A DNA stretch of 64,000 nucleotides from assembly GCA_053919585.1 (NCBI GenBank), contig CM132792.1. One strand, written 5' to 3'. A program made the translations under genes and the position numbers. Under the pieces are notes generated by a model. The model was given only the letters and a program-made list of their open reading frames with translations, was not told the origin of the DNA and searched no databases. The DNA is from Euprymna scolopes. Lineage: Eukaryota. Each line of letters opens with the position of its first letter. The first letter of the stretch is position 1. This document shows, piece after piece, positions 16,545 through 53,099 of the stretch.

Positions 16545-16775
16545 GGAAGCAAGGGGTGTGCAATCCCCAACCACACCTGTCCTGAATCGGTACTGCTTAA
16601 ATCCAGTAGCAAGGATGAGTCTAGAACGACTGGAAACAATGTAAATATAAGCAGAGAACACATACAGCACCTGGAATTCCGAAATAGTCACTCATTTTAG
16701 TATTGGCCAGACTCAATGTTGCTTAACTTCAGTGATCTAACGGGAACCGGTGTGTCGATGTGATTATGCTGTATA
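16545..16775 (-). mobile_element. 5S rRNA-derived SINE (SINE3): 5S head plus ~115-bp body
   Basis: 5S-like head at 16660-16775. The body TTGTTTCCAGTCG..GGTGTGGTTGG.GATTGC is shared with the 49982 copy. Confidence 0.8.
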
Positions 16776-17478
16776 TAACTGATTTATACAAGAGGAATAA
16801 ATGAATGATGCTCTACAACACTAACAGCACCACACACCACTAAACCAATGCCAGCAAAATACGTCTGGACATTGTCCTAATTACTCCCTCACAATAAATC
16901 GCGTGTATGCGGCCATTTGTTAATTCATGAATATTTAAGTGTAAATAGAGTGGTCATCATTGGAGGAAAAATGGATTAGATTTAACGTTCTGCTTGCTAT
17001 AGGTATTATCTTTTGCTTACTAGAGACTCTCTTTTTTTATTTTATTTATTAGAAACTTATATTTTATACCAGCTTACTAAGTTTACTATTTCAAAGGAGC
17101 AGGACTAATTTTCATTGATTCAAAATTGTACAAATCACACCTTTATGTGAAATTATGGTCTTCTCATTTCGATAGAATGTTGTTGCACTTGCATAAATTA
17201 TAAATTTTAAGAGGTTAAAGTAGTTTGCTTAAAGCATTGTTTACTGTAAATACAAAAGCAGAACAATAAAGGGATGTAACAGATAACTTCAAACTGAAGT
17301 AACTTTAAGTATAATGATCGAACCGACCATGCAGTTTCACTTTATTGAATCAATATATGTGTGTATATGTACAATGATATATAACATTCTACATGTAATA
17401 TGTTAAAGGGGAACGATAAAATTGTTGACATAGAAAAGACATGATTCCATTTCCGTTTTATGAAAACCGGTTTTCTTA

Positions 17479-20400
17479 TATTGGTGTAGATAACCTATTA
17501 GTTGACTAGTGTACAAATATTGTTGATGACCATCTACTAGTTGACTAGTGTACAGAAATTGTTGATGACCATCTACTAGTTGATTAGTGTACAAATATTG
17601 TTGCAGACCATCTACTAGTTGACTAGTGTAAAAATATTGTTGATGACCATCGACTAGTTGACTAGTGTACAGAAATTGTTGCAGACCATCTACTAGTTAA
17701 CTAGTGTACAAATAATGTTGCAGACCATCGACTAGTTGACTAGTGTACAGAGATTGTTGCAGATGATCGACTAGTTGACTAGTGTACAGGAATTGTTGCA
17801 GACCATCGACTAGTTGACTAGTGTACAGAAAGTGTTGCAGACCATCGACTAATTGACTAGTGTACAAATAATGTTGCAGACCATCGACTAGTTAACTAGT
17901 GTACAAATAATGTTGCAGACCATCGACTAGTTGACTAGTGTACAGAAATTGTTGCAGACCATCGACTAGTTGACTAGTGTACAAATAATGTTGCAGACCA
18001 TCGACTAGTTGACTAGTGTACAAATAATGTTGCAGACCATCGATAGTAAACTAGTGTACTAATAATGTTGCAGACCATCGACTAGTTGACTAGTGTACAA
18101 AAAATGTTGAAGACCATCGACTAGTTGACTAGTGTACAAATAATGTTGCAGACAATCGACTAGTTGACTAGTGTACAAATAATGTTGCAGACCATCGACT
18201 AGTTTACTAGTGTACAAATAATGTTGCAGACCATCGACTAGTTGACTAGTGTACAGAAATTGTTGCAGACCATCGACTAGTTAACTAGTGTACAGAAATT
18301 GTTGCAGACCATCGACTAGTTGACTAGTGTACAAAAATTGTTGCAGACCATCGACTAGTTAACTAGTGTACAAATAATGTTGCAGACCATCGATAGTTAA
18401 CTAGTGTACAAATAATGTTGCAGACCATCGACTAGTTAACTAGTGTACAAGTAATGTTGCAGACCATCGACTAGTTGACTAGTGTACAAATAATGTTGCA
18501 GACCATCGACTAGTTGACTAGTGTACAAATAATGTTGCAGACCATCGACTAGTTGACTAGTGTACAAATAAAGTTGCAGACCATCCACGAGTTAACTACT
18601 GTACAAATAATGTTGCAGACCATCGACTAGTTTTTAGTGTACAAATAATGTTGCAGACCATCGACTAGTTAACTAGTGTACAAATAATGTTGCAGACACT
18701 CGACTAGTTGACTAGTGTACAAATAATTTTGCAGACCATCGACTAGTTGACTAGTGTACAAATAATGTTGCAGACCATCGACTAGTTGACTAGTGTACAG
18801 AAATTGTTGCAGACCATCGACTAGTTGACTAGTGCACAGAAATTGTTGCAGACCATCGACTAGTTGACTAGTGTACAAAAATTGTTGCAGACCATCGACT
18901 AGTTAACTAGTGTACAAATAATGTTGCAGACCATCGATAGTAAACTAGTGTACAAATAATGTTGCAGACCATCGACTAGTTGACTAGTGTACAAATAATG
19001 TTGCAGACCATCGACTAGTTGACTTGTGTACAAATAATGTTGCAGACCATCGACTAGTTGACTAGTGTACAAATAATGTTGCAGACCATCGACTAGTTGA
19101 CTAGTGTACAAATAATGTTGCAGACCATCCACGAGTTAACTACAGTACAAAAAATGTTGCAGACCATCGACTAGTTTTTAGTGTACAAATAATGTTGCAA
19201 ACCATACACTAGTTGACTAGTGTACAAATAATGTTGCAGACCATCGACTAGTTGAATAGTGTACAAATAATGTTGCAGACCATCTACTAGTTGACTAGTG
19301 TACAAATAATGTTGCAGACCATCGACTAGTTGACTAGTGTACAGAAATGGTTGCAGACCATCGACTAGTTGACTAGTGTACAGAAATTGTTGCAGACCAT
19401 CGACTAGTTGACTAGTGTACAAATAATGTTGCAGACCATCGATGTTAACTAGTTTACAAATTATGTTGCACACCATCGACTAGTTGACTAGTGTACAAAT
19501 AATGTTGCAGACCATCGACTAGTTGACTAGTGTACAAATAATGTTGAAAACCATCGACTAGTTGACTAGTGTACAAATAATGTTGCAGACCATCGACTAG
19601 TTGACTAGTGTACAGAAATTGTTGCAGACAATCGACTAGTTGACTAGTGTATAAATAATGTTGCAGACCATCGACTAGTTGACTAGTGTGCAAATAATGT
19701 TGCAGACCATCGACTAGTTGACTAGTGTACAGAAATTTTTGCAGACAATCGACTCGTTGACTAGTGTACAAATAATGTTGCAGACCATCGACTAGTTGAC
19801 TAGTGTACAGAAATTGTTGCAGACCATCGACTAGTAAACTAGTGTACAAATAATGTTGCAGACCATCGACTAGATGACTAGTGTACAAATAATGTTGCAG
19901 ACAATCAACTAGTTGACTAGTGTACAAATAATGTTGCAGACCATCGACTAGTTGACTAGTGTACAAATAATGTTGCAGACCATCGACTAGTTAACTAGTG
20001 TACAAATAATGTTGCCGACCATCGACTAGTTAACTAGTGTACAAATAATGTTGCAAACCATCGACTAGTTGACTAGTGTACAAACAATGTTGCAGACACT
20101 CGACTAGTTGACTGGTGTACAAATAATGTTGCAGACCATCGACTAGTTGACTGGTGTACAAATAATGTTGCAGACTATCGACTAGTTGACTAGTGTACAA
20201 ATAATGTTGCAGATCATCCACTAGTTGACTAGTGTACAAAAAATGTTGCATACCATCGACTAGTTGACTAGTGTACAAATAATGTTGCAGACCATCGACT
20301 AGTTGACTAGTGTACAAATAATGTTGCAGACCATCCACGAGTTAACTAGTGTACAAATAATGTTGCAAACCATCAACTAGTTGACTAGTGTACAAATAAT

Positions 20401-23400
20401 GTTGCAGACCATCGACTAGTTGACTAGTGTACAAATAATGTTGCAGACCATCGACTAGTTGACTAGTGTACAGAAATTGTTGCAGACCATCGACTAGTTG
20501 ACTAGTGCACAGAAATTGTTGCAGACCATCGACTAGTTGACTAGTGTACAAAAATTGTTGCAGACCATCGACTAGTTAACTAGTGTACAAATAATGTTGC
20601 AGACCATCGATAGTTAACTAGTGTACAAATAATGTTGCAGACCATCGACTAGTTAACTAGTGTACAAATAATGTTGCAGACCATCGACTAGTTGACTAGT
20701 GTACAAATAATGTTGCAGACCATCGACTAGTTGACTAGTGTACAAATAATGTTGCAGACCATCGACTAGTTGACTAGTGTACAGAAATTGTTGCAGACCA
20801 TCGACTAGTTGACTAGTGCACAGAAATTGTTGCAGACCATCGACTAGTTGACTAGTGTACAAAAATTGTTGCAGACCATCGACTAGTTAACTAGTGTACA
20901 AAAAATGTTGCAGACCATCGATAGTAAACTAGTGTACAAATAATGTTGCAGACCATCGACTAGTTGACTAGTGTACAAATAATGTTGCAGACCATCGACT
21001 AGTTGACTAGTGTACAAATAATGTTGCAGACCATCGACTAGTTGACTAGTGTACAAATAATGTTGCAGACCATCGATTAGTTTTTAGTGTACAAATAATG
21101 TTGCAAACAATACACTAGTTGACTAGTGTACAAATAATGTTGCAGACCATCGACTAGTTGAATAGTGTACAAATAATGTTGCAGACCATCTACTAGTTGA
21201 CTAGTGTACAAATAATGTTGCAGACAATCGACTAGTTGACTAGTGTACAGAAATTGTTGCAGACCATCGACTAGTTGACTAGTGTACAGAAATTGTTGCA
21301 GACCATCGACTAGTTGACTAGTGTACAAATAATGTTGCAGACCATCGATGTTAACTAGTTTACAAATTATGTTGCACACCATCGACTAGTTAACTAGTGT
21401 ACAAATAATGTTGCAGACCATCGACTAGTTGACTAGTGTACAAATAATGTTGCAGACCATCGACTAGTTGACTAGTGTACAAATAATGTTGCAGACCATC
21501 GACTAGTTGACTAGTGTACAGAAATTGTTGCAGACAATCGACTAGTTGACTAGTGTATAAATAATGTTGCAGACCATCGACTAGTTGACTAGTGTACAAA
21601 TAATGTTGCAGACCATCGACTAGTTGACTAGTGTACAGAAATTTTTGCAGACCATCGACTCGTTGACTAGTGTACAAATAATGTTGCAGACCATCGACTA
21701 GTTGACTAGTGTACAGAAATTGTTGCAGACCATCGACTAGTAAAATAGTGTACAAATAATGTTGCAGACCATCGACTAGTAAACTAGTGTACAAATAATG
21801 TTGCAGACCATCGACTAGATGACTAGTGTACAAATAATGTTGCAGACAATCTACTAGTTGACTAGTGTACAAATAATGTTGCAGACCATCGACTAGTTGA
21901 CTAGTGTACAAATAATGTTGCAGACCATCGACTAGTTAACTAGTGTACAAATAATGTTGCCGACCATCGACTAGTTAACTAGTGTACAAATAATGTTGCA
22001 AACTATCGACTAGTTGACTAGTGTACAAATAATGTTGCAGACACTCGACTAGTTGACTGGTGTACAAATAATGTTGCAAACCATCGACTAGTTGACTGGT
22101 GTACAAATAATGTTGCAGACTATCGACTAGTTGACTAGTGTACAAATAATGTTGCAGATCATCGACTAGTTGACTAGTGTACAAAAAATGTTGCATACAA
22201 TCGACTAGTTGACTAGTGTACAAATAATGTTGCAGACCATCGACTAGTTGACTAGTGTACAAATAATGTTGCAGACCATCGACTAGTTAACTAGTGTACA
22301 AATAATGTTGCAGACCATCGACTAGTTGACTAGTGTACAAATAATGTTGCAGACCATCGACTAGTTGACTAGTGTACAGAAATTGTTGCAGACCATCGAC
22401 TAGTAAAATAGTGTACAAATAATGTTGCAGACCATCGACTAGTAAACTAGTGTACAAATAATGTTGCAGACCATCGACTAGATGACTAGTGTACAAATAA
22501 TGTTGCAGACAATCGACTAGTTAACTTGTGTACAAATAATGTTGCATACCATCGACTAGTTGACTAGTGTACAAATAATGTTGCAGACCATCGACTAGTT
22601 GACTAGTGTACAAATAATGTTGCAGACCATCGACTAGTTAACTAGTGTACAAATAATGTTGCCGACCATCGACTATTTAACTTGTGTACAAACAATGTTG
22701 CAAACCATCGACTAGTTGACTAGTGTACAAATAATGTTGCAGACACTCGACTAGTTGACTGGTGTACAAATAATGTTGCAGACCATCGACTAGTTGACTG
22801 GTGTACAAATAATGTTGCAGACTATCGACTAGTTAACTAGTGTACAAATAATGTTGCAGACCGTTGACTAGTGTACAAATAATGTTGCAGACCATCGACT
22901 AGATGACTAGTGTACAAATAATGTCGCAGACAATCGACTAGTTAACTAGTGTACAAATAATGTTGCAGACCATCGACTAGTTGACTAGTGTACAAATAAT
23001 GTTGCAGACCATCGACTAGTTGACTAGTGTACAAATAATGTTGCAGACCATCGACTAGTTGACTAGTGTACAAATAATGTTGCAGACCATCGACTAGTTA
23101 ACTAGTGTACAAATAATGTTGCCGACCATCGACTAGTTAACTAGTGTACAAATAATGTTGCAAACAATCGACTAGTTGACTAGTGTACAAATAATGTTGC
23201 AGACACTCGACTAGTTGACTGGTGTACAAATAATGTTGCAGACCATCGACTAGTTGACTGGTGTACAAATAATGTTGCAGACTATCGACTAGTTGACAAG
23301 TGTACAAATAATGTTGCAGACCATCGACTAGTTAACTAGTGTACAAATAATGTTGCAGACCATCGACTAGTTGACTAGTGTACAAATAATGTTGCAGACC

Positions 23401-26400
23401 ATCCACGAGTTAACTAGTGTACAAATAATGTTGCAGACCATCGACTAGTTGACTAGTGTACAAATAATGTTGCAAACCATACACTAGTTGACTAGTGTAC
23501 AGAAATTGTTGCAGACCATCGACTAGTTGACTAGTGCACAGAAATTGTTGCAGACCATCGACTAGTTGACTAGTGTACAAAAATTGTTGCAGACCATCGA
23601 CTAGTTAACTAGTGTACAAATAATGTTGCAGACCATCGATAGTAAACTAGTGTACAAATAATGTTGCAGACCATCGACTAGTTGACTAGTGTACAAATAA
23701 TGTTGCAGACCATCGACTAGTTGACTAGTGTACAAATAATGTTGCAGACCATCGACTAGTTGACTAGTGTACAAATAATGTTGCAGACCATCGACTAGTT
23801 TTTAGTGTACAAATAATGTTGCAGACCATCCACGAGTTAACTACAGTACAAAAAATGTTGCAGACCATCGACTAGTTTTTAGTGTACAAATAATGTTGCA
23901 AACCATACACTAGTTGACTAGTGTACAAATAATGTTGCAGACCATCGACTAGTTGAATAGTGTACAAATAATGTTGCAGACCATCTACTAGTTGACTAGT
24001 GTACAAATAATGTTGCAGACCATCGACTAGTTGACTAGTGTACAGAAATTGTTGCAGACCATCGACTAGTTGACTAGTGTACAGAAATTGTTGCAGACCA
24101 TCGACTAGTTGACTAGTGTACAAATAATGTTGCAGACCATCGATGTTAACTAGTTTACAAATAATGTTGCAGACCATCGACTAGTTGACTAGTGTACAAA
24201 TAATGTTGCAGACCATCGACTAGTTGACTAGTGTACAAATAATGTTGCAGACCATCGACTAGTTGACTAGTGTACAAATAATGTTGCAGACCATCGACTA
24301 GTTGACTAGTGTACAGAAATTGTTGCAGACAATCGACTAGTTGACTAGTGTATAAATAATGTTGCAGCATATCGACTAGTTGACTAGTGTGCAAATAATG
24401 TTGCAGACCATCGACTAGTTGACTAGTGTACAGAAATTTTTGCAGACAATCGACTCGTTGACTAGTGTACAAATAATGTTGCAGACCATCGACTAGTTGA
24501 CTAGTGTACAGAAATTGTTGCAGACCATCGACTAGTAAAATAGTGTACAAATAATGTTGCAGACCATCGACTAGTAAACTAGTGTACAAATAATGTTGCA
24601 GACCATCGACTAGATGACTAGTGTACAAATAATGTTGCAGACAATCAACTAGTTGACTAGTGTACAAATAATGTTGCAGACCATCGACTAGTTTACTAGT
24701 GTACAAATAATGTTGCAGACCATCGACTAGTTAACTAGTGTACAAATAATGTTGCCGACCATCGACTAGTTAACTAGTGTACAAATAATGTTGCAAACCA
24801 TCGACTAGTTGACTAGTGTACAAACAATGTTGCAGACACTCGACTAGTTGACTGGTGTACAAATAATGTTGCAGACCATCGACTAGTTGACTGGTGTACA
24901 AATAATGTTGCAGACTATCGACTAGTTGACTAGTGTACAAATAATGTTGCAGATCATCGACTAGTTGACTAGTGTACAAAAAATGTTGCAGACCATCGAC
25001 TAGATGACTAGTGTACAAATAATGTTGCAGACCATCGACTAGTTGACTAGTGTACAAATAATGTTGCAGACCATCCACGAGTTAACTAGTGTACAAATAA
25101 TGTTGCAGACCATCGACTAGTTGACTAGTGTACAAATAATGTTGCAAACCATCGACTAGTTGACTAGTGTACAAATAATGTTGCAGACCATCGACTAGTT
25201 GACTAGTGTACAAATAATGTTGCAGACCATCGACTAGTTGACTAGTGTACAGAAATTTTTGCAGACCATCGACTAGTTGACTAGTGCACAGAAATTGTTG
25301 CAGACCATCGACTAGTTGACTAGTGTACAAAAATTGTTGCAGACCATCGACTAGTTAACTAGTGTACAAATAATGTTGCAGACCATCGATAGTTAACTAG
25401 TGTACAAATAATGTTGCAGACCATCGACTAGTTAACTAGTGTACAAATAATGTTGCAGACCATCGACTAGTTGACTAGTGTACAAATAATGTTGCAGACC
25501 ATCGACTAGTTGACTAGTGTACAAATAATGTTGCAGACCATCGACTAGTTGACTAGTGTACAGAAATTGTTGCAGACCATCGACTAGTTGACTAGTGCAC
25601 AGAAATTGTTGCAGACCATCGACTAGTTGACTAGTGTACAAAAATTGTTGCAGACCATCGACTAGTTAACTAGTGTACAAATAATGTTGCAGACCATCGA
25701 TAGTAAACTAGTGTACAAATAATGTTGCAGACCATCGACTAGTTGACTAGTGTACAAATAATGTTGCAGACCATCGACTAGTTGACTAGTGTACAAATAA
25801 TGTTGCAGACCATCGACTAGTTGACTAGTGTACAAACATTGTTGCAGACCATCGACTAGTTGACTAGTGTACAAATAATGTTGCAGACCATCGACTAGTT
25901 TTTAGTGTACAAATAATGTTGCAAACCATACACTAGTTGACTAGTGTACAAATAATGTTGCAGACCATCGACTAGTTGAATAGTGTACAAATAATGTTGC
26001 AGACCATCTACTAGTTGACTAGTGTACAAATAATGTTGCAGACCATCGACTAGTTGACTAGTGTACAGAAATTGTTGCAGACCATCGACTAGTTGACTAG
26101 TGTACAGAAATTGTTGCAGACCATCGACTAGTTGACTAGTGTACAAATAATGTTGCAGACCATCGATGTTAACTAGTTTACAAATTATGTTGCACACCAT
26201 CGACTAGTTAACTAGTGTACAAATAATGTTGCAGACCATCGACTAGTTGACTAGTGTACAAATAATGTTGCAGACCATCGACTAGTTGACTAGTGTACAA
26301 ATAATGTTGCAGACCATCGACTAGTTGACTAGTGTACAGAAATTGTTGCAGACCATCGACTCGTTGACTAGTTTACAAATCATGTTGCAGACCATCGACT

Positions 26401-29400
26401 AGTTGACTAGTGTACAGAAATTGTTGCAGACCATCGACTAGTAAAATAGTGTACAAATAATGTTGCAGACCATCGACTAGTAAACTAGTGTACAAATAAT
26501 GTTGCAGACCATCGACTAGATGACTAGTGTACAAAGAATGTTGCAGACAATCTACTAGTTGACTAGTGTACAAATAATGTTGCAGACCATCGACTAGTTG
26601 ACTAGTGTACAAATAATGTTGCAGACCATCGACTAGTTAACTAGTGTACAAATAATGTTGCCGACCATCGACTAGTTAACTAGTGTACAAATAATGTTGC
26701 AAACCATCGACTAGTTGACTAGTGTACAAATAATGTTGCAGACACTCGACTAGTTGACTGGTGTACAAATAATGTTGCAAACCATCGACTAGTTGACTGG
26801 TGTACAAATAATGTTGCAGACTATCGACTAGTTGACTAGTGTACAAATAATGTTGCAGATCATCGACTAGTTGACTAGTGTACAAAAAATGTTGCAGACC
26901 ATCGACTAGTCAACTAGTGTACAAATAATGTTGCAGACCATCGACTAGTTGACTAGTGTACAAATAATGTTGCAGACCATCGACTAGTTAACTAGTGTAC
27001 AAATAATGTTGCAGACCATCGACTAGTTGACTAGTGTACAAATAATGTTGCAGACCATCCACTAGTTGACTAGTGTACAGAAATTGTTGCAGACCATCGA
27101 CTGGTAAAATAGTGTACAAATAATGTTGCAGACCATCGACTAGTAAACTAGTGTACAAATAATGTTGCAGACCATCGACTAGATGACTAGTGTACAAATA
27201 ATGTTGCAGACAATCGACTAGTTAACTTGTGTACAAATAATGTTGCATACCATCGACTAGTTGACTAGTGTACAAATAATGTTGCAGACCATCGACTAGT
27301 TGACTAGTGTACAAATAATGTTGCAGACCATCGACTAGTTAACTAGTGTACAAATAATGTTGCCGACCATCGACTATTTAACTAGTGTACAATGTTGCAA
27401 ACCATCGACTAGTTGACTAGTGTACAAATAATGTTGCAGACACTCGACTAGTTGACTGGTGTACAAATAATGTTGCAGACCATCGACTAGTTGACTGGTG
27501 TACAAATAATGTTGCAGACTATCGACTAGTTGACTAGTGTACAAATAATGTTGCAGACCATCGACTAGTTGACTAGTGTACAAATAATGTTGCAGACCAT
27601 CGACTAGTTAACTAGTGTACAAATAATGTTGCAGACCATCGACTAGTTGACTAGTGTACAAATAATGTTGCAGACCATCGACTAGTAAACTAGTGTACAA
27701 ACAATGTTGCAGACCATCGACTAGTTGACTAGTGTACAGAAATTGTTGCAGACCATCGACTAGTTGACAAGTGTACAGAAATTGTTGCAGACCATCGACT
27801 AGTTGACAAGTGTACAGAAATTGTTGAAGACCATCGACTAGTTGACTAGTGTACAAATAATGTTGCAGACCATCGATAGTTAACTAGTGTACAAATAATG
27901 TTGCAAACCATCGACTAGTTGACTAGTGTACAAATAATGTTGCAGACACTCGACTAGTTGACTAGTGTACAAATAATGTTGCAGACCATCGACTAGTTGA
28001 CTAGTGTACAAATAATGTTGCAGACAATCGACTAGTTTACTAGTGTGCAGAAATTGTTGCAGACCATCGACTAGTTGACTAGTGTACAGAAATTGTTGCA
28101 GACCATCGACTAGTTGACTAGTGTACAAATAATGTTGCAGACCATCGACTAGTTGACTAGTGTACAAATAATGTTGCAGACCATCAATAGTTAACTAGTG
28201 TACAAATAATGTTGCAGACCATCGACTAGTTAACTAGTGTACAAGTAATGTTGCAGACCATCGACTAGTTGACTAGTGTACAGAAATTGTTGCAGACCAT
28301 CGACTAGTTGACTAGTGTATAAATAATGTTGCAGACCATCGACTAGTTGACTACTGTGCAAATAATGTTGCAGACCATCGACTAGTTGACTAGTGTACAG
28401 AAATTGTTGCAGGCCATTGACTAGTTGACTAGTGTACAAATAATGTTGCAGACCATCGACTAGTTGACTAGTGTACAAATAATGTTGCAGACCATCGACT
28501 AGTTGACTAGTGTACAAATAATGTTGCAGACCATCGACTAGTAAACTAGTGTACAAATAATGTTGCAGACCATCGACTAGTTGACTAGTGTACAAATAAT
28601 GTTGCAGACCATCAACTAGTTGACTAGTGTACAGAAATTGTTGCAGACCATCGACTAGTTGACTAGTGTACAAATAATGTTGCAGACCATCGACTAGTAA
28701 ACTAGTGTACAAATAATGTTGCAGACCATCGACTAGTTAACTAGTGTACAAATAATGTTGCAGACCATCGACTAGTTAACTAGTGTACAAATAATGTTGC
28801 AGACCATCGACTAGTTTACTAGTGTACAGAAATTGTTACAGACCATCGACTAGTTGACTAGTGTATAAATAATGTTGCAGACCATCGACTAGTTGACTAG
28901 TGTGCAAACAATGTTGCAGACCATTCACTAGTTGACTAGTGTACAAATAATGTTGCAGACCATCGACTTGTTAACTAGTGTACAAATAATGTTGCAGACT
29001 ATCGACTAGTTAACTAGTGTACAAATAATGTTGCAGACCATCGATAGTTAACTAGTGTACAAATAATGTTGCAGACCATCGACTAGTTAACTAGTGAACA
29101 AATAATGTTGCAGACCATCGACTAGTTTACTAGTGTACAAATAATGTTGCAGACCATCCACGAGTTAACTAGTGTACATATAATGTTGCAGACTATCGAC
29201 TAGTTACCTAGTGTACAAATAATGTTGCAAACCATCGACTAGTTACCTAGTGTACAAATAATGTTGCAGACACTCGACTATTTACTACTGTACAAACAAT
29301 GTTGCAGACAATCGACTAGTTGACTAGTGTACAAATAATGTTGCAGACCATCGACTAGTTAACTAGTGTACAAATAATGTTGCAAACCATCGACTAGTTG

Positions 29401-35400: not shown

Positions 35401-38400
35401 GTATAGAAATTGTTGCAGACCATCGACTAGTTGACTAGTGTACAAATAATGTTGCAGACCATCGATAGTTAACTAGTGTACAAATAATGTTGCAGACCAT
35501 CGACTAGTTAACTAGTGAACAAATAATGTTGGAGACCATCGACTAGTTGACTAGTGTACAAATAATGTTGCAGACCATCCACGAGTTAACTAGTGTACAA
35601 ATAATGTTGCAGACTATCGACTAGTTAACTAGTGTACAAATAATGTTGCAAACCATCGACTAGTTGACTAGTGTACAAATAATGTTGCAGACCATCGACT
35701 AGTTGACTAGTGTACAAATAATGTTGCAGACACTCGACTATTGACTAGTGTACAAATAATGTTGCAGACCATCGACTAGTTGACTAGTGTACAAATAATG
35801 TTACAGACCATCGACTAGTAAACTAGTGTACAAATAATGTTGCAAACCATCGACTAGTTGACTAGTGTACAAATAATGTTGCAGACTATCGACTAGTTAA
35901 CTAGTGTACAAATAATGTTGCAGACCATCGAGTAGTTGACTAGTGTACAAATAATGTTGCAGACCATCGACTAGTTGACTAGTGTACAAATAATGTTACA
36001 GACCATCGACTAGTTGACTAGTGTACAAATAATGTTGCAGACCATCCACTAGCTTACTAGTGTACAAATAATGTTGCAGACCATCGACTAGTTTACTAGT
36101 GTACAAATAATTTTGCAGACCATCGACTAGTTGACTAGTGTACAAATAATGTTGCAGACCATCGACTAGTCAACTCGTGTACAAATAATGTTGCAGACCA
36201 TCGACTAGTCAACTCGTGTACAAATAATGTTGAAGACCATCGACTTGTCAACTAGTGTACAAATAATGTTGCAGACCATCGACTAGTCAACTAGTGTACA
36301 AATACTGTTGCAGACAATCGACTAGTAAACTAGTGTACAAATAATGTTGCAGACAATCGACTAGTCAACTAGTGTACAAATAATGTTGCAGACCATCGAT
36401 AGTTAACTAGTGCACAAATAATGTTGCAGACCATCGACTAGTTGACTAGTGTACAAATAATGTTGCAGACACTCGACTAGTTGACTAGTGTACAAATATA
36501 GTTGCAGACCATCGACTAGTTGACTAGTGTACAAATAATGTTGCAGACCATCGACCTGTTTACTAGTGTACAGAAATTGTTGCAGACCATCGACTAGTTG
36601 ACTAGTGTACAGAAATTGTTACAGACCATCGACTAGTTGACTAGTGTACAAATAATGTTGCAGACCATCGATAGTTAACTAGTGTACAAATAATGTTGCA
36701 GACCATCGACTAATTGAATAGTGTACAAATAATGTTGCAGACCATCGACTAGTTTACTAGTGTACAAATAATGTTGCAGACCATCGACTAGTTGACTAGG
36801 GTACAAATGATGTTGCAGACCATCGACTAGTTAACTAGTGTACAAATAATGTTGCAGACCATCGACTAGTTGACTAGTGTACAAATAATGTTGCAGACCA
36901 TCGACTAGTTAACTAGTGTACAAATAATGTTGCAGACCATCGACTAGTTGACTAGTGTACAAATAATGTTGCAGACCATCGACTAGTTGACTAGTGTACA
37001 AATAATGTTGCAGACCATCGACTAGTTGACTAGTGTACAAATAATGTTGCAGACCATCGACTAGTTAACTAGTGTACAAATAATGTTGCAGACCATCGAC
37101 TAGTTGACTAGTGTACAAATAATGTTGCAGACCATCGACTAGTTGACTAGTGTACAAATAATGTTGCAGACCATCGACTAGTTGACTATGTGTACAAATA
37201 ATGTTGCAGACCATCGACTAGTTAACTAGTGTACAAATAATGTTGCAGACCATCGACTAGTTGACTAGGGTACAAATAATGTTGCAGACACTCGACTAGT
37301 TGACTAGTGTACAGAAATTGTTGCAGACCATCGACTACTTGACTAGTGTACAAATAATGTTGCAGACCATCGACTAGTTAACTAGTGTACAAATAATGTT
37401 GCAGACCATCAACTAGTTTACTAGTGTACAGAAATTGTTACAGACCATTTACTAGTTGACTAGTGTACAAATAATGTTGCAGACACTCGACTAGTTGACT
37501 AGTGTACAAATAATGTTGCAGACCGTCGAGTAGTTGACTAGTGTACAAATAATGTTGCAGACCATCGACTAGTTTACTAGTGTACAAATAAAGTTGCAGA
37601 CCATTCACTAGTTGACTAGTGTACAAATAATGTTGCAGACCATCGACTTGTTAACTAGTGTACAAATAATGTTGCAGACTATCGACTAGTTAACTAGTGT
37701 ACAAATAATGTTGCAGACACTCGACTAGTTGACTAGTGTACAAATAATGTTGCAGACCATCGACTAGTTGACTAGTGTACAAATAATGTTGCAGACCATC
37801 GACTAGTTGACTAGTGTACAAATAATGTTGCAGACCATCGACTAGTTTACTAGTGAACAAATAATGTTGCAGACCATCGACTAGTTGAATAGTGTACAGA
37901 AATTGTTGCAGACCATCGACTAGTTGACTAGTATACAAAAAATGTTGCAGACCATCGACTAGTTGACTAGTGTACAAATAATGTTGCAGACCATCGACTA
38001 GTTGACTAGTGTACAAATAATGTTGCAGACCATCGACTAGTTGACTAGTGTACAGAAATTGTTGAAGACCATCGACTAGTTGACTAGTGTACAAATAATG
38101 TTGCAGACCATCGACTACTTAACTAGTGTACAACTAATATTGCAGACCATCCACTAGTTGACTAGTGTACAAATAATGTTGCAGACCATCCACTAGCTGA
38201 CTAGTGTACCAATAATGTTCAGACCATCGACTAGTTGACTAGTGTACAAATAATTTTGCAGACCATCGACTAGTTGACTAGTGTACAAATAATGTTGCAG
38301 ACCATCGACTAGACAACTAGTGTGCAAATAATGTTGCAGACCATCGACTAGTCAACTAGTGTACAAATAATGTTGCAGACCATCGACTAGTCAACTAGTG

Positions 38401-41400
38401 TACAAATAATGTTGCAGACCATCGACTAGTAAACTAGTGTACAAATAATGTTGCAGACCATCGACTAGTCAACTAGTGTACAAATAATGTTGCAGACCAT
38501 CGACTTGTCAACTAGTGTACAAATAATGTTGCAGACCATCGACCTGTTGACTAGTGTACAGAAATTGTTGCAGACCATCGACTAGTTGACTAGTGTACAG
38601 AAATTGCTGCAGACTATCGACTAGTTGACTAGTGTACAAATAATGTTGCAGACCATCGATAGTTAACTAGTGTACAAATAATGATGCAGACCATCGACTA
38701 GTTGACTAGTGTACAAATAATGTTGCATACCATCGACTAGTTTACTAGTGTACAAATAATGTTGCAGACCATCGACTAGTTGACTAGGGTACAAATAATG
38801 TTGCAGACCATCGACTAGTTAACTAGTGTACAAATAATGTTGCAGACCGTTGACTAGTGTACAAATAATGTTGCAGACCATCGACTAGTTAACTAGTGTA
38901 CAAATAATGTTGCAGACCATCGCCTAGTTGACTAGTGTACAAATAATGTTGCAGACCATCGACTAGTTGACTAGTGTACAAATAATGTTGCAGACCATCG
39001 ACTAGTTGACTAGTGTACAAATAATGTTGCAGACCATCGACTAGTTAACTAGTGTACAAATAATGTTGCAGACCATCGACTAGTTGACTAGTGTACAAAT
39101 AATGTTGCAGACCATCGACTAGTTGACTAGTGTACAAATAATGTTGCAGACACTCGACTAGTTGACTAGTGTACAAATAATGTTGCAGACCATCGACTAG
39201 TTGACTAGTGTACAAATAATGTTGCAGACCATCGACTAGTTGACTAGTGTGCAGAAATTGTTGCAGACCATCGACTAGTTGACTAGTGTACAAAAATTGT
39301 TGCAGACCATCGACTAGTTGACTAGTGTACAAATAATGTTGCAGACCATCGATAGTTAACTAGTGTACAAATAATGTTGCAGACCATCGACTAGTTAACT
39401 AGTGTACAAGTAATGTTGCAGACCATCGACTAGTTGACTAGTGTACAAATAATGTTGCAGACCATCGACTAGTTAACTAGTGTACAAATAATGTTGCAGA
39501 CCATCCACGAGTTAACTACTGTACAAATAATGTTGCAGACCATCGACTAGTTTTTAGTGGACAAATAATCTTGCAAACCATCGACTAGTTGACTAGTGTA
39601 CAAATAATGTTGCAGACACTCGACTAGTTGACTAGTGTACAAATAATGTTGCAGACCATCGACTAGTTGACTAATGTACAGAAATTGTTGCAGACCATCG
39701 ACTAGTTGACTAGTGTACAGAAATTGTTGCAGACCCTCGACTAGTTGACTAGTGTACAAATAATGTTGCAGACCATCGATAGTTAACTAGTGTACAAACA
39801 ATGTTGCACACCATCGACTAGTTGACTAGTGTACAAATAATGTTGCAGACCATCGACTAGTTGACTAGTGTACAAATAATGTTGCAAACCATCGACTAGT
39901 TGACTAGTGTACAAGTAATGTTGCAGACCATCGACTAGTTGACTAGTGTACAGAAATTGTTGCAGACCATCGACTAGTTGACTAGTGTATAAATAATGTT
40001 GCAGACCATCGACTAGTTGACTAGTGTGCAAATAATGTTGCAGACCATCGACTAGTTGACTAGTGTACAGAAATTGTTGCAGACCATCGACTAGTTGACT
40101 CGTGTGCAAATAATGTTGGAGACCATTCACTAGTTGACTAGTGTACAAATAATGTTGCAGACCATCGACTTGTTAACTAGTGTACAAATAATGTTGCAGA
40201 CTATCGACTAGTTAACTAGTGTACAAATAATGTTGCAGACACTCGACTAGTTGACTAGTGTACAAATAATGTTGCAGACCATCGACTTGTTGACTAGTGT
40301 ACAAATAATGTTGCAGACCATCGACTAGTAAACTAGTGTACAAATAATGTTGCAAACCATCGACTAGTCAACTAGTGTACAAATAATGTTGCAGACCATC
40401 GATAGTTAACTAGTGCACAAATAATGTTGCAGACCATCGACTAGTTGACTAGTGTACAAATAATGTTGCAGACACTCGACTAGTTGACTAGTGTACAAAT
40501 AATGTTTCAGACCATCGACTAGTTGACTACTGTACAAATAATGTTGCAGACACTCGACTAGTTGACTAGTGTACAGAAATTGTTGCAGACCATCGACTAG
40601 GTGACTAGTGTACAGAAATTTTTGCAGACCATCGACTAGTTGACTAGTGTATAGAAATTGTTGCAGACCATCGACTAGTTGACTAGTGTACAAATAATGT
40701 TGCAGACCATCGATAGTTAACTAGTGTACAAATAATGTTGCAGACCATCGACTAGTTAACTAGTGAACAAATAATGTTGGAGACCATCGACTAGTTGACT
40801 AGTGTACAAATAATGTTGCAGACCATCCACGAGTTAACTAGTTTACAAATAATGTTGCAGACTATCGACTAGTTAACTAGTGTACAAATAATGTTGCAAA
40901 CCATCGACTAGTTGACTAGTGTACAAATAATGTTGCAGACCATCGACTAGTTGACTAGTGTACAAATAATGTTGCAGACACTCGACTATTGACTAGTGTA
41001 CAAATAATGTTGCAGACCATCGACTAGTTGACTAGTGTACAAATAATGTTACAGACCATCGACTTGTAAACTAGTGTACAAATAATGTTGCAAACCATCG
41101 ACTAGTTGACTAGTGTACAAATAATGTTGCAGACTATCGACTAGTTAACTAGTGTACAAATAATGTTGCAGACCATCGACTAGTTGACTAGTGTACAAAT
41201 AATGTTGCAGACCATCGACTAGTTGACTAGTGTACAAATAATGTTACAGACCATCGACTAGTTGACTAGTGTACAAATAATGTTGCAGACCATCCACTAG
41301 CTTACTAGTGTACAAATAATGTTGCAGACCATCGACTAGTTTACTAGTGTACAAATAATTTTGCAGACCATCGACTAGTTGACTAGTGTACAAATAATGT

Positions 41401-44400
41401 TGCAGACCATCGACTAGTCAACTCGTGTACAAATAATGTTGCAGACCATCGACTAGTCAACTCGTGTACAAATAATGTTGCAGACAATCGACTAGTAAAC
41501 TAGTGTACAAATAATGTTGCAGACAATCGACTAGTCAACTAGTGTACAAATAATGTTGCAGACCATCAATAGTTAACTAGTGCACAAATAATGTTGCAGA
41601 CCATCGACTAGTTGACTAGTGTACAAATAATGTTGCAGACACTCGACTAGTTGACTAGTGTACAAATATAGTTGCAGACCATCGACTAGTTGACTAGTGT
41701 ACAAATAATGTTGCAGACCATCGACCTGTTTACTAGTGTACAGAAATTGTTGCAGACCATCGACTAGTTGACTAGTGTACAGAAATTGTTACAGACCATC
41801 GACTAGTTGACTAGTGTACAAATAATGTTGCAGACCATCGATAGTTAACTAGTGTACAAATAATGTTGCAGACCATCGACTAATTGAATAGTGTACAAAT
41901 AATGTTGCAGACCATCGACTAGTTTACTAGTGTACAAATAATGTTGCAGACCATCGACTAGTTGACTAGGGTACAAATGATGTTGCAGACCATCGACTAG
42001 TTAACTAGTGTACAAATAATGTTGCAGACCATCGACTAGTTGACTAGTGTACAAATAATGTTGCAGACCATCGACTAGTTAACTAGTGTACAAATAATGT
42101 TGCAGACCATCGACTAGTTGACTAGTGTACAAATAATGTTGCAGACCATCGACTAGTTGACTAGTGTACAAATAATGTTGCAGACCATCGACTAGTTGAC
42201 TAGTGTACAAATAATGTTGCAGACTATCGACTAGTTGACTAGTGTACAAATAATGTTGCAGACCATCGATAGTTAACTAGTGTACAAATAATGATGCAGA
42301 CCATCGACTAGTTGACTAGTGTACAAATAATGTTGCATACCATCGACTAGTTTACTAGTGTACAAATAATGTTGCAGACCATCGACTAGTTGACTAGGGT
42401 ACAAATAATGTTGCAGACCATCGACTAGTTAACTAGTGTACAAATAATGTTGCAGACCGTTGACTAGTGTACAAATAATGTTGCAGACCATCGACTAGTT
42501 AACTAGTGTACAATTAATGTTGCAGACCATCGCCTAGTTGACTAGTGTACAAATAATGTTGCAGACCATCGACTAGTTGACTAGTGTACAAATAATGTTG
42601 CAGACCATCGACTAGTTGACTAGTGTACAAATAATGTTGCAGACCATCGACTAGTTAACTAGTGTACAAATAATGTTGCAGACCATCGACTAGTTGACTA
42701 GTGTACAAATAATGTTGCAGACCATCGACTAGTTGACTAGTGTACAAATAATGTTGCAGACCATCGACTAGTTGACTAGTGTACAAATAATGTTGCAGAC
42801 CATCGACTAGTTGACTAGTGTACAAATAATGTTGCAGACCATCGACTAGTTAACTAGTGTACAAATAATGTTGCAGACCATCGACTAGTTGACTAGTGTA
42901 CAAATAATGTTGCAGATCATCGACTAGTTGACTAGTGTACAAATAATGTTGCAGACCATCGACTAGTTAACTAGTGTACAAATAATGTTGCAGACCATCG
43001 ACTAGTTTACTAGTGTACAAATAATGTTGCAGACCATCGACTAGTTGACTAGTGTACAAATAATGTTGCAGACCATCGACTAGTTGACTAGTGTACAAAT
43101 AATGTTGCAGACCATCGACTAGTTGACTAGTGTACAAATAATGTTGCAGACCATCGACTAGTTGACTAGTGTACAGAAATTGTTGCAGACCATCGACTAG
43201 TTGACTAGTGTACAAATAATGTTGCAGACCATCGACTAGTTGACTAGTGTACAAATAATGTTGCAGACCATCGACTAGTTGACTAGTGTACAGAAATTGT
43301 TGCAGACCATCGACTAGTTGACTAGTGTACAAATAATGTTGCAGACCATCGACTAGTTGACTAGTGTACTAATAATGTTGCAGACCATCGACTAGTTAAC
43401 TAGTGTACAAATAATGTTGCAGACCATCGACTAGTTGACTAGTGTACAAATAAAGTTGCAGACACTCGACTAGTTGACTAGTGTACAAATAATGTTGCAG
43501 ACCATCGACTAGTTTACTAGTGTACAAATAATGTTGCAGACCATCGACTAGTTTACTAGTGTACAGAAATTGTTGCAGACCATCGACTAGTTGACTAGTG
43601 TACAAATAATGTTGCAGACCATCGACTAGTTGACTAGTATACAAATAATGTTGCAGACCATCGACTAGTTTACTAGTGTACAAATAATGTTGCAGACCAT
43701 CGACAAGTTAACTCGTGTACAAATAATGTTGCAGACCATCGACTAGTTGACTAGTGTACAAATAATGTTGCAGACCATCGACTAGTTAACTAGTGTACAA
43801 ATAATGTTGCAGACCATCGACTAGTTTACTAGGGTACAAATAATGTTGCAGACACTCGACTAGTTGACTAGTGTACAGAAATTGTTGCAGACCATCGACT
43901 AGTTGACTAGTGTACAAATAATGTTGCAGACCATCGACTAGTTAACTAGTGTACAAATAATGTTGCAGACCATCGACTAGTTGACTAGTGTACAAATAAT
44001 GTTGCAGACACTCGACTAGTTGACTAGTGTACAAATAATGTTGCAGACCATCGACTAGTTTACTAGTGTACAAATAATGTTGCAGACCATCGACTAGTTT
44101 ACTAGGGTACAAATAATGTTGCAGACACTCGACTAGTTGACTAGTGTACAGAAATTGTTGCAGACCATCGACTAGTTGACTAGTGTACAAATAATGTTGC
44201 AGACCATCGACTAGTTAACTAGTGTACAAATAATGTTGCAGACCATCGACTAGTTGACTAGTGTACAAATAATGTTGCAGACACTCGACTAGTTGACTAG
44301 TGTACAAATAATGTTGCAGACCATCGACTAGTTTACTAGTGTACAAATAATGTTGCAGACCATCGACTAGTTTACTAGTGTACAAATAATGTTGCAAACC

Positions 44401-45439
44401 ATCGACTAGTTGACTAGTGTACAAATAATGTTGCAGCCCATCGACTAGTTGACTAGTGTACAAATAATGTTGCAGACCATCGACTAGTTGACTGGTGTAC
44501 AAATAATGTTGCAGACCATCGACTAGTTGACTAGTGTACAAATAATGTTGCAGACCATCGACGAGTTAACTAGTGTACAAATAATGTTGCAGACCATCGA
44601 CGAGTTAATTAGTGTACAAATAATGTTGCAGACCATCGACTAGTTGACTAGGGTAGAAATAATGTTGCAGACACTCGACTAGTTGACTAGTGTACAGAAA
44701 TTGTTGCAGACCATCGACTAGTTGACTAGGGTACAAATAATGTTGCAGACCATCGACTAGTTAACTAGTGTACAAATAATGTTGCAGACCATCGACTAGT
44801 TTACTAGTGTACAGAAATTGTTGCTGACCATCGACTAGTTGACTAGTGTATAAATAATGTTGCAGACCATCGACTAGTTGACTAGTGTACAGAAATTGTT
44901 GCAGACCATCGACTAGTTGACTAGTGTACAAATAATGTTGCAGACCATCGAGTATTTGACTAGTGTACAAATAATGTTGCAGACCATCGACTAGTTAACT
45001 AGTGTACAAATAATGTTGCAGACCATCCACTAGTTGACTAGTGTACAAATAATTTTGCAGACCATCGACTAGTTTACTAGTGTACAAATAATGTTGCAGA
45101 CCATCGACTAGTCAACTAGTGTACAAATAATGTTGCAGACCATCGACTAGTCAACTAGTGTACAAATAATGTTGCAGACCATCGACTTGTCAACTAGTGT
45201 ACAAATAATGTTGCAGACCATCGACTAGTCAACTAGTGTACAAATAATGTTGCAGACCATTGACTAGCCAACTAGTGTACAAATAATGTTGCAGACCATC
45301 GACTAGTCAACTAGTGTACAAATAATGTTGCAAACCATCGACTAGTCAACTAGTGTACAAATAATGTTGCAGACCATCGACTAGTCAACTAGTGTACAAA
45401 TAATGTTGCAGACCATCGACTAGTTGACTAGTGTATAAA
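17479..45439. repeat. Satellite array, 39-bp unit TAATGTTGCAGACCATCGACTAGTTGACTAGTGTACAAA, ~717 copies, with higher-order duplications
   Basis: Continuous tandem repeat, 27,961 bp / 39. Shared variant patterns recur at kb scale. Confidence 0.98.
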
Positions 45440-45484
45440 TCACAAGAGCGATAGAAGCCTTCCATCATGTTTGAAAGTGACACT

Positions 45485-46028
45485 ATGTTCAGCGAGCAAG
45501 ATTAGAAATCCTCTGCTGTACAATTCATGCTCTCTATTGATCCAAATTATGGCAACAAGACCATTGCCAGCACTCAAAAATGCATCGCTGGATTGCCACG
45601 AATAACAGGAACATGTCCAGGGTGATGAAAACAAAGTTTCCCGCCACAGTTATGGTCTTTGCTGTGGTTCAAGTGAAGGTCACATCATGCCACATCACAT
45701 ATTTGATGTGGGCTTGAAAGTCTACACAAAAGTGTACCTGGATGCGTTGAAAAGTGCAGTCAGGTAGTCGATGGCAGACCCTGTTTGTATCCTTCTCTCA
45801 TTGCCCCCCCCTCCTTTCCCGACTTGAACATATTGGACTACTTCGTTTGATCATATGTCGAGAACATTACTAATATGACTTTACACAGCATCAACGCCAG
45901 CCTGATCGCCGCTGTTTGCCGAGTGTTTGCCAGCCAAGCTCCTGTCAGCGCTTGTGGAAAAGGCATGCTTCCAGCTCTAGACCTGCATAGAGGCGATGAT
46001 TGAAATTGAAGGCGGCTACATTGAATAG
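45485..46028 (+). pseudogene. Internally deleted maT transposase remnant
   Basis: Fragments MFSEQ..RVMKTKFPATVMV..SEGHIMP.HIFDVGLKV.TKVYLD..DLN.LDYFV..IEAMIEIEGGYIE*. Confidence 0.8.
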
Positions 46029-47686
46029 ATGTCAGCTCTACTACATAATCAAGTTACCTGAATTTATTTTTACAATAAAAATTTCAAAATAAAGCTGTAG
46101 TGTTGTTTTCTTTAGGGTGACAATTTTATCGTTCCACCGTGTAATATGAATAACCAACCCTCCTCTCGAAAATTCGGGAAGGTGATCTGAGCATAATATA
46201 GCATCCCAGCCTTTTCATAAACCGGCTTTTTAGTGTTCTTTTCAGTTTGTTTGTAGATCAACTGGTCAGACAGATAATCACTGACTACTAAATTCATTTC
46301 TCTTTTCTCTTTTAGATTATTGTTATTGCTATCGTTGGTTTAAAATATAAAAATAAAACTATTCTTAAACGATAAAATAAATTAACATTTTTAAGACAAC
46401 AAATAATGGACCCATTTCAAATGTAACAAATCTGTATTAAGTATCAAAGATTGTTGATTTTTCAAGTTTTTTTTTTTTTGCTTGTTTTGTTTCTTTTTGT
46501 TGCTTCTTTTTCTGTTTTCTTTCCATTCAACTACTATTGATCTGATTTCTAATCTAAGAAAGACAGCTGATGTACATCTAAGAATCGCATTTTCTTTAGC
46601 AACGCCAAATTTATTGTCTGCTTCTAATTCCCTCTTGATTTTTCTTGTTTTTTTATTTTTTTTTCTGAATTGGCCTCGTTTTATGATTTCAAGGTTTTAC
46701 TAAGAAAATAGAAACAATGAAATATTCGGTCTTCATGAAAAAGAAATAGAACAAATTTTGTGTCTTCATTTATGACAAATGAAGAAGTTCAATAGTGGAA
46801 AAATGTTGTTGTTTTTTTTTAACTTCCGGATTCTTTAGAATTTGTAGAAATTTTGATGGAAAAATATCTGAACTTTAAGATGTCATAGAAAAATCATTTT
46901 TCATTTAAACAACAAATAAAACAAAAAAAACCCTATTCACATGACTTTTAGATTAGTGATTCATTTAAAGAAAGGTGAAGTATGTTTTTATGGAAATCGT
47001 TCCAGACAAAGTGTGAAGTCACTTGGTGTGAGAAGCTAAAAAGGACAAAATAGGTTATTGCAAGAACAGAAGATGCCTATTGATATCAGTCTTTAAAAGA
47101 TCAATGCTATAAGTTGGGAAAAAAGCAATAACAAAAAAACGAAATTATTTTTTTATTTTATCGATAACATTGAACCGGGGATGGTTCATTTCTACAGAGC
47201 TGCCACTGGTACCAAATACCTCGCAGATGGTTGATATGCCGTAACACAACCCAAATTAAAATCGTGTAAACTTGATAAAGCAAAAATAGGGAGGTAGTTT
47301 TAGCATCGCAATGTTCGTCTCAGCCAATCTTTAATCCGTCAACTTTTCAACGTTTCAACAAACTCACTATTCCAACTATCTCCTCTGCCACCTTATTATA
47401 TATGCATGATTTTTAATCTTGTCTTCTCGCGCCATGTTTGCCGCTTGTTTTATCAGCGGATCAATCTGTGAGATTTCTAATGATTCCATTCAGCTATTGG
47501 CAGTAGATGGAAAATGTGCCGGGGCTTCTGCCAACAATACAACATAAGAAATGAAACACGGTTCTTTTTCAGGTAAGGATGATGCAAATCTATGTCAGTT
47601 CATTATCCCTATGGTCTAGTATAAAAAGAAAACAAACAAATGTAACAATGGCGCAATTAGCTGTAGTTTGCAAAGGAAAACATTAC

Positions 47687-52888: not shown

Positions 52889-52979
52889 AGGTTCAAGTGA
52901 GGGCCACATCTTGTCACCTCACATTTTCGGAGTCAGCTTGAAAGTCAGCACAAAAGTGTACCTGGATGTGCTGAAGAGT
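52889..52979 (+). pseudogene. Short maT transposase fragment
   Basis: SSEGHILSPHIFGVSLKVSTKVYLDVLKS, homologous to 45670-45755. Confidence 0.75.
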
Positions 52980-53099
52980 TTGATAAATCCTACAAAATGC
53001 TCCTCCATACAGGGCCACGCAATCAGTTATAGTTTTATCTTCTTTAGTAAACGCTGTCCCCAGTCACAAATCCTTCATCCACATAATGTCTTATATTAA

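What the first reader, a model, noticed from the sequence alone, without database searches (positions are those of the whole stretch)
17406..46141. A 28-kb satellite born inside a mariner-type transposon, with its unexpanded seed 14 kb away
Seen: the left TIR and leader (17406-17478, ..AGAAAAGACATGATTCCATTTCCGTTTTATGAAAACCGGTTT) run straight into the array. The last unit runs into AAATCACAAGAGCGATAGAAGCCTTC.., then the transposase remnant and right TIR. The sister copy at 59843-59180 (-) reads ..CATGATTTCATTTCCGTTTGATGAAAACCGGTTT-(T)n-GATAAGAGACCATTTACTAGCTGGCCAGTTGTGTACAAA-TCCCAAGAGCAATGGGAGCCTTC, i.e. one monomer at the same position. So a single 39-bp piece of the 5' leader, just upstream of the transposase start, was amplified ~700-fold in place, turning a ~0.8-kb element into a ~28.7-kb one that still has both TIR cores and TA flanks. 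Known: TE-derived satellites are reported. An intact before/after pair at this scale seems unusual (inference), and the unit could in principle be mobilised as cargo.
Basis: seen in the sequence. Interest (0 to 1): 0.88.

Follow-up and report, generated by a model that had tools for sequence, protein, structure and literature searches.

The report
Satellite array grown inside a transposon
A 28-kb block of about 718 copies of a 39-bp unit grew in place from a single stretch of the untranslated leader of one dead Tc1/mariner-type (maT-like) transposon copy in a mollusc genome; this is a very clean example of a process that is already known.

Summary
TRF finds one 39-bp x 718.5 array at 17499-45440, with no N. 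It lies between a left inverted repeat plus leader (17406-17473) and a decayed transposase remnant plus right inverted repeat (45441-46141).

More than 2,200 database ORFs belong to this transposon family. Over 45 of them read through the 5' UTR, and each shows leader, poly-T, one copy of the seed, about 25 nt, then the start ATG. Two reading frames fix the family seed as a 40-mer. The array unit is this 40-mer with one T>G change, a 3-bp deletion and two substitutions. The ancestral T survives almost only in the left-edge units.

Corrections:
- The family is maT-like (DD37D), not mariner proper.
- The short form is an internal-deletion derivative, not a classic MITE.
- The "sister" copy is just one of thousands of paralogues (76-81% identical), not the progenitor.
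- The left end needs two 1-bp gaps to keep a TA flank.
- Nothing supports mobilisation as cargo.

TE-derived satellites of this kind are known, for example Xenopus miDNA4 and Arabidopsis ENSAT1. The scan noted similar, unchecked cases elsewhere in this genome. This is a new member of a known kind.

The parts
17404..17405 (+). Putative left TA target-site duplication
   Evidence: Read directly. It holds only if the left inverted repeat has two 1-bp gaps relative to the right end and the sister.
17406..17433 (+). Left terminal inverted repeat; the outer 8 nt are damaged and the 16-nt core is intact
   Evidence: The exact 16-mer occurs only here and at 46120-46135 on the opposite strand.
17441..17473 (+). 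5' UTR leader (ATGATTCCATTTCCG...AAAACCGGTTT), conserved across the family
   Evidence: 81% identical to the sister. It translates as MIPFPFNENRF at the start of more than 30 family ORFs.
17474..17518 (+). Degenerate poly-T remnant and a first, strongly diverged unit
   Evidence: Aligns to the sister's poly-T plus seed. Unit list.
17499..45440 (+). 39-bp satellite array, about 718 units. Left-edge units carry the ancestral CATCTACTAG. Two internal segmental duplications: 18754-22801 ~ 23456-27498 and 34037-37229 ~ 39286-42397.
   Evidence: TRF; unit analysis.
45441..45466 (+). Remaining 5' UTR between the last unit and the start codon (TCACAAGAGCGATAGAAGCC...)
   Evidence: In register with the sister's TCCCAAGAGCAATGGGAGCC and with the family translation KSQER.EPSIM.
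45467..46028 (+). Decayed transposase remnant. It is the short form lacking residues 42-179 of the full protein, and it has frameshifts, stops and a further ~71-bp deletion that removes the WQQD (second D) region.
   Evidence: Translations; tblastn with P0335; alignment to the sister; 2,240 family hits with E down to 2e-56.
46114..46141 (-). Right terminal inverted repeat (reverse complement reads CACGGTGGAACGATAAAATTGTCACCCT)
   Evidence: The junction with the flank is present in contigs of X1, X2 and X8.
46142..46143 (+). Right TA target-site duplication
   Evidence: Read directly.
59180..59843 (-). Paralogous, 3'-truncated family copy with a single unexpanded seed (59747-59708) after a poly-T run. 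Its start codon is mutated to ACG.
52890..53015 (+). Third, short fragment of the same transposon family
   Evidence: blastn 82% over 90 bp; tblastn to P0335 residues 207-246.

Best explanation
An old, non-autonomous copy of a maT-like (DD37D) Tc1/mariner element inserted at a TA site. In this family the 5' UTR runs: inverted repeat, leader, poly-T tract, a ~40-nt segment (TGTTGCAGACCATCTACTAGTTGGCCAGTTGTGTACAAAT), about 25 nt, then ATG.

In this one copy that segment plus about 2 nt of the poly-T side was duplicated head to tail, probably by replication slippage or unequal exchange. Unequal crossing-over and gene conversion then expanded and homogenised it to about 718 units (27.9 kb). Two multi-kb intra-array duplications account for roughly a quarter of the length.

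The array is a by-product of tandem-repeat dynamics. It is not a functional part of the transposon, and the host element is dead: no first or second catalytic D, frameshifts, a damaged left end.

Shown: the array; its position between the two ends of one element; homology and register of the unit with the family's single-copy seed; ancestral states at the array edge; presence of the family in three organisms' reads but of the satellite in only two.

Inferred: the molecular mechanism of the first duplication and of the growth.
For: - Array and its bounds.
- Family identity: 2,240 ORFs at E<=1e-3. The full-length 354-aa member P0335 has D163/D255/D293, with 37 residues between the last two. DDE_3 and HTH Pfam hits.
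- The seed is family-wide and single-copy. Of 55 hits to the UTR translation, more than 45 read ...(F)n-CCRPSTSWPVVYKSQER.EPSIM-SESDTMF. These include long-form copies that continue into the HTH region absent from the short form (P0122, P0125, P0167, P0170). None shows two seeds in tandem.
- Two frames (CCRPSTSWPVVYK and VADHLLVGQLCTN) fix the 40-mer.
- The unit matches it in 14 + 8 + 9 contiguous bases, with T>G, a 3-bp deletion and 2 substitutions.
- The ancestral T is in units 2, 3, 4 and 6 at the left edge, and in only about 5 of the other ~700 units.
- The last unit joins the UTR in the same register as the sister and the family.
- Direction of origin: run X3 (organism C) has the transposon family at very high depth and a single-seed copy (joint letters TGGCCAATTGTGTCGAAATCCCAAG), but zero depth for the main satellite variant. 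X1 and X2 have it at about 70 times the single-copy contig depth.
- Growth by block duplication.
Against: - No read or contig was shown to span the array or the array/transposon junctions. The length and the linkage of the two ends rest on the assembly alone.
- The left end lacks a clean TA plus inverted-repeat terminus.
- All units, including the edge ones, already share the 3-bp deletion. The progenitor state is therefore inferred, not seen.
- The family evidence comes from ORFs of one ENA assembly (ERZ21867824). Its species is not known to me and its DNA could not be fetched.
- Contig depth is a poor copy-number measure.
Confidence: 0.85

Rival explanations
1. Capture in the other direction. 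A pre-existing 39-bp satellite donated one monomer to the ancestor of the transposon family (the model proposed for Xenopus miDNA4). The element here would sit at, or have recombined with, the mother array.
For: This direction was proposed for a Tc1/mariner MITE in Xenopus (as summarised in PMC12628747). All array units share derived features that are absent from the family seed.
Against: - The seed is single-copy in more than 45 family members, including long-form ones.
- Organism C has the family and the seed but no detectable satellite.
- Both array edges join the UTR in register.
- Edge units carry the family's T state.
- Depth fits about one array's worth of units.
Confidence: 0.04
2. Assembly artefact. 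The two ends belong to different loci, or the array length is inflated or collapsed by the assembler.
For: No spanning read was seen. Arrays of 28 kb of 92%-identical 39-mers are hard to assemble. Two multi-kb near-duplicate blocks lie inside the array.
Against: - There are 199 unit variants in a non-periodic order, and the duplicate blocks are not identical (15-19 of 20 units), which speaks against simple stutter.
- Both junctions are in register with the family structure. Even a chimera would need two elements, each expanded at the same site.
- Both flanks are AT-rich and share TAATATG next to the TA.
- The right inverted-repeat/flank junction is reproduced in three runs.
Confidence: 0.08
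3. The array is a selected, functional structure (for example centromeric or a regulatory RNA source) rather than a neutral by-product.
For: RNA-labelled runs of organism A hold up to 0.21 of the sampled array words. The unit contains the palindromes ACTAGT (twice) and TGTACA.
Against: In RNA run X8 the satellite/flank depth ratio (about 100-130) is about the same as in the DNA runs (about 70). The untranscribed-looking flank is present too, so DNA carry-over explains the signal. There is only about one array per genome. No protein or chromatin data exist.
Confidence: 0.03

Closest known systems
miDNA4, a Tc1/mariner MITE of Xenopus tropicalis carrying a satellite motif (Scalvenzi & Pollet, as described in PMC12628747 and PMC9659126)
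   Same: A non-autonomous Tc1/mariner element whose internal segment exists as one monomer in most copies and as tandem arrays in some.
   Different: There the authors favoured capture of a pre-existing repeat, and many copies carry arrays. Here the evidence favours transposon to satellite, with a single, very long (28 kb) array in one copy. The family is maT-like, and the host form keeps a truncated ORF.
ENSAT1 satellite from the 5' UTR of the Atenspm (En/Spm-like) DNA transposon in Arabidopsis (Table 1 of PMC9659126)
   Same: A satellite derived from the 5' UTR of a class II transposon.
   Different: Different superfamily and kingdom. I did not read the primary paper, so the details of array position are not compared.
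Tandem-repeat-containing MITEs of bivalves (DTC84 in Donax trunculus, PMC3879986; pearl/CvA- and Helentron-associated satellites in oysters, PMC7492417)
   Same: Mollusc non-autonomous DNA elements with internal tandem repeats related to satellites.
   Different: In those, short arrays (a few units) are a regular part of many element copies and spread by transposition. Here the family has one unit, and a single copy expanded about 700-fold.
Tetris foldback transposon and its derived satellite in Drosophila virilis (PMC4079207)
   Same: Internal repeats of a DNA transposon expanded into long satellite arrays.
   Different: Tetris has internal tandem repeats as a standard feature. Here the source segment is unique in the element.

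Membership tests
Tc1/mariner superfamily | DDE/D transposase of the DDE_3/Tc1-mariner type with N-terminal helix-turn-helix domains | tested here: met
   Family members P0015 and P0256 hit PF13358, and P0170 and P0256 hit HTH_23. The window's remnant matches the family at E = 2e-56. On its own it gives no Pfam hit because it is decayed.
Tc1/mariner superfamily | Short terminal inverted repeats flanked by a TA duplication | tested here: inconclusive
   16-nt exact core at both ends. The right end is CACGG... directly after TA. The left end needs two 1-bp gaps to place a TA.
maT clade (DD37D) | 37 residues between the second and third catalytic aspartates, with D rather than E as the third | tested here: met
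   In the full-length family member P0335: D163, D255, D293, with 91 and 37 residues between them. In the window's own copy the first D is lost with the internal deletion and the second with the 71-bp deletion.
mariner sensu stricto (DD34D) | 34 residues between the second and third D | tested here: not met
   The spacing is 37.
MITE | Short, non-coding, high-copy derivative with inverted repeats | tested here: inconclusive
   High copy number is met (more than 2,240 ORFs; very high contig depth). But the short form is ~0.9 kb and many copies still carry a 216-aa ORF, so it is better called an internal-deletion derivative.
Transposon-derived satellite DNA | Head-to-tail array whose unit is homologous to a defined segment of the element | tested here: met
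   the unit against the 40-mer fixed by two reading frames of family ORFs.
Transposon-derived satellite DNA | Direction of origin is element to satellite | tested here: met
   The seed is single-copy in more than 45 copies. Edge units are ancestral. Organism C has the family without the satellite.
Transposon-derived satellite DNA | Spread to several loci or heterochromatic location | not testable with these tools
   No genome-wide DNA search of this genome was available. Depth suggests about one array.

The most novel reading that the evidence does not exclude
The 5' UTR of this maT-like family (poly-T tract followed by an ACTAG-rich segment) may be a recurrent hot spot for satellite birth in this mollusc genome. 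Several independent arrays would then have started from the same or neighbouring UTR segments in different copies. That would give a natural series of array ages from which the early steps of satellite birth could be reconstructed. Earlier scan notes mention a 3-kb array in the 5' UTR of a 'mariner MITE' and a 1.6-kb minisatellite from a mariner inverted repeat elsewhere in this genome. I could not see their sequences.
Probability: 0.2. Interest if true: 0.55.

Novelty: new member of a known kind. Interest (0 to 1): 0.38.

Why it matters
This is a clean, datable example of how a satellite starts:
- The source segment is unique in the transposon.
- Thousands of unexpanded paralogues give the ancestral sequence.
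- The array is still bounded by both ends of its host copy.
- The edge units keep the ancestral base.
- A related organism has the family but not the satellite.

That makes it useful teaching and calibration material for models of array birth and growth (slippage, then unequal exchange, then block duplication). It does not change what is known about transposon-derived satellites.

Tried and rejected
- Pfam on the separate reading-frame pieces and on an X-joined composite of the remnant gave nothing. Identity came from the protein search instead.
- My first guess that SESDTMF was the FSDE catalytic motif was wrong. It is the true N-terminus: P0335 starts MSESDTMF.
- The look-up of encoding contigs for P0002, P0096 and P0009 returned positions but no DNA, because the sample file is too large. 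The family seed was therefore deduced from two protein frames, not from DNA.
- A protein search with an ORF read from the array (window 24158-24706, minus strand) found nothing. This says nothing about other arrays.
- The search of earlier findings by sequence was blank.
- A text search of papers for four 20-mers of the unit found nothing.
- A 9-nt direct repeat TGTAATATG lies next to both ends (17395-17403 and 46140-46148). I considered it as an alternative target-site duplication and rejected it. On the right its first two bases belong to the inverted repeat (the sister and family ends start CA after TA), and the rest is TA plus an AT-rich flank.
- Transcription: RNA-labelled runs hold the unit, but at the same ratio to the flank as the DNA runs. 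Not shown.
Full report
**1. What is there**

Tandem Repeats Finder reports a single array of period 39 with 718.5 copies, 92% matches and no indel share, at 17499-45440. The window's only N runs are far outside it.

I cut the array at the conserved GTGTACA. This gives 720 units and 199 distinct variants, and the commonest variant occurs 159 times. Random pairs of units are 91.8% identical and neighbours 93.0%.

There is no strict higher-order period. Two large internal duplications stand out: 18754-22801 against 23456-27498, and 34037-37229 against 39286-42397. In each, 15-19 of every 20 units are identical. About a quarter of the length therefore came from block duplication.

**2. The frame around the array**

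- The 16-mer GGAACGATAAAATTGT occurs exactly twice in the window, at 17410-17425 (+) and 46120-46135 (-).
- The right end reads, on the reverse strand, TA then CACGGTGGAACG.... The paralogue at 59843 reads TA then CAAGGTAGAAC....
- The left end reads TA then AAGGGGAACG and needs two 1-bp gaps to align.
- After the left repeat comes a leader (17441-17473) that is 81% identical to the paralogue. A degenerate T-rich stretch and a diverged first unit follow.
- The last unit runs into TCACAAGAGCGATAGAAGCC..ATG (ATG at 45467), in the same register as the paralogue's TCCCAAGAGCAATGGGAGCC.
- A 9-nt repeat TGTAATATG sits beside both ends. I read it as TA plus an AT-rich target, not as a longer duplication, because on the right its first two bases belong to the inverted repeat.

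**3. What the element is**

Pfam sees nothing in the decayed pieces. A composite translation with X at each break finds 2,240 proteins at E<=1e-3. Nearly all come from one ENA assembly, most are 216 aa long, and several carry PF13358.

A cluster-mate, P0335, is a full 354-aa transposase that starts MSESDTMFNERDRR.... Its catalytic residues are D163, D255 and D293, with 37 residues between the last two. The closest full-length relatives from other animals show the same spacing. The family is therefore maT-like (DD37D) within Tc1/mariner, not mariner proper.

The 216-aa form lacks residues 42-179, that is the second helix-turn-helix and the first D. The window's array-bearing copy is of this short form. 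It also has frameshifts, stops and a 71-bp deletion that removes the WQQD region. It is dead.

**4.

I searched with the first 48 residues of a family ORF that happens to read through the UTR. This gave 55 hits.

More than 45 of them read MIPFPFNENRFS-(F)n-CCRPSTSWPVVYKSQER.EPSIM-SESDTMF.... Others start within the inverted repeat and read through the same stretch. So the UTR order is leader, poly-T, one seed, about 25 nt, ATG.

Several of these ORFs continue into the N-terminal region that the short form lacks (P0122, P0125, P0167, P0170). The seed therefore belongs to the UTR of the full element and is not a scar of the internal deletion. None of the ORFs has two seeds in tandem.

A few copies are read in the next frame (VADHLLVGQLCTN). 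The two frames together fix the family seed as TGTTGCAGACCATCTACTAGTTGGCCAGTTGTGTACAAAT.

The main array unit is AA + TGTTGCAGACCATCGACTAGTTGACTAGTGTACAAAT. That is the same sequence with one T>G change, a 3-bp deletion and two substitutions. It is closer to the family seed than the paralogue's own, more mutated, seed is.

**5. Direction and history**

At the diagnostic base (CATC[T/G]ACTAG) the family state T is found in units 2, 3, 4 and 6 at the left edge, and only about five times in the remaining ~700 units, which carry G. Array edges are expected to escape homogenisation, so this fits origin from the UTR.

I laid Logan contigs on 45320-46900:
- The transposon part has enormous depth in runs of organisms A, B and C.
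- A single-seed copy is visible in C (letters TGGCCAATTGTGTCGAAATCCCAAG at a joint).
- The main satellite variant has summed contig depth 2,218 in X1, against 12-31 for single-copy contigs.
- It has depth 343 in X2, against about 5 for single-copy contigs.
- It has depth 0 in X3 (organism C).

The satellite is therefore younger than the family. Its abundance is of the order of this one array, as far as such depths can be trusted.

The right inverted-repeat/flank junction is present in contigs of X1, X2 and X8, about 98% identical to the window. The insertion is thus shared by organisms A and B.

RNA-labelled runs hold array words. In X8, however, the satellite-to-flank ratio is about the same as in the DNA runs, so transcription is not shown.

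**6. Mechanism**

Inferred, not shown: a first head-to-tail duplication of the ~40-nt segment, by slippage or unequal exchange next to the poly-T tract. Unequal crossing-over and gene conversion then followed, and later multi-kb block duplications. The host element plays no active part.

**7. Comparison with what is known**

Reviews list satellites that arose from MITEs, inverted repeats and UTRs of transposons (PMC9659126; PMC12628747). Examples include:
- a Tc1/mariner MITE in Xenopus tropicalis (miDNA4) whose internal motif occurs as one monomer or as arrays;
- ENSAT1 from the 5' UTR of an En/Spm-like element in Arabidopsis;
- bivalve MITEs with internal repeats (PMC3879986, PMC7492417).

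The present case is a new member of this kind. Its merits are its size, its completeness (both element ends are present) and the strength of the ancestral-state evidence. The unit itself was not found in the paper library.

**8.

- The copy 14 kb away is one paralogue among thousands, 76-81% identical, and a third fragment lies at 52890-53015. It is not the progenitor.
- The left TA flank is not clean.
- Mobilisation as cargo is unsupported.

Earlier scan notes (s1-288653, s1-280721) report similar arrays in 'mariner' elements elsewhere in this genome. I could not check them.

**9. Open points**

No read spans the array, so linkage and length rest on the assembly. The family DNA could not be fetched. 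A protein search with an array ORF found nothing, which is not informative.

Noticed in passing
window 15391-15507 (+), 16659-16776 (-), 49982-50098 (+): Three full-length matches to the 5S rRNA model, above Rfam's gathering score (57-66 bits), dispersed and in both orientations. Two lie within 2 kb of the left flank of the array. They could be 5S-derived SINEs or 5S pseudogenes.
   Followed up: no
window 45207-45400, against the rest of the array: Units at the right end carry ACTAGTCAACTAGT, the exact reverse complement of the usual ACTAGTTGACTAGT. This is a 2-nt flip between two ACTAGT palindromes, as if by a small palindrome-mediated inversion or template switch.
   Followed up: partly
family ORFs P0015, P0002 etc. 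(ENA assembly ERZ21867824): Dozens of copies of the internal-deletion form keep an intact 216-aa ORF: 41 N-terminal residues fused to the C-terminal catalytic half, without the first D. The breakpoint falls at a shared W (IW/RW). So one deletion derivative amplified massively while its ORF stayed open in many copies.
   Followed up: partly
window 17395-17403 and 46140-46148: The same 9-mer TGTAATATG lies beside both element ends. I read it as an AT-rich target plus TA, not as a 9-bp duplication.
   Followed up: yes
window 4550-5794 (+): Two adjacent long ORFs (192 and 216 aa), possibly another mobile-element remnant. Not examined.
   Followed up: no
window 46592-46697: In all three DNA runs a ~100-bp stretch of the right flank has contig depth 100-3,000, far above its neighbours. 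It looks like another dispersed repeat.
   Followed up: no
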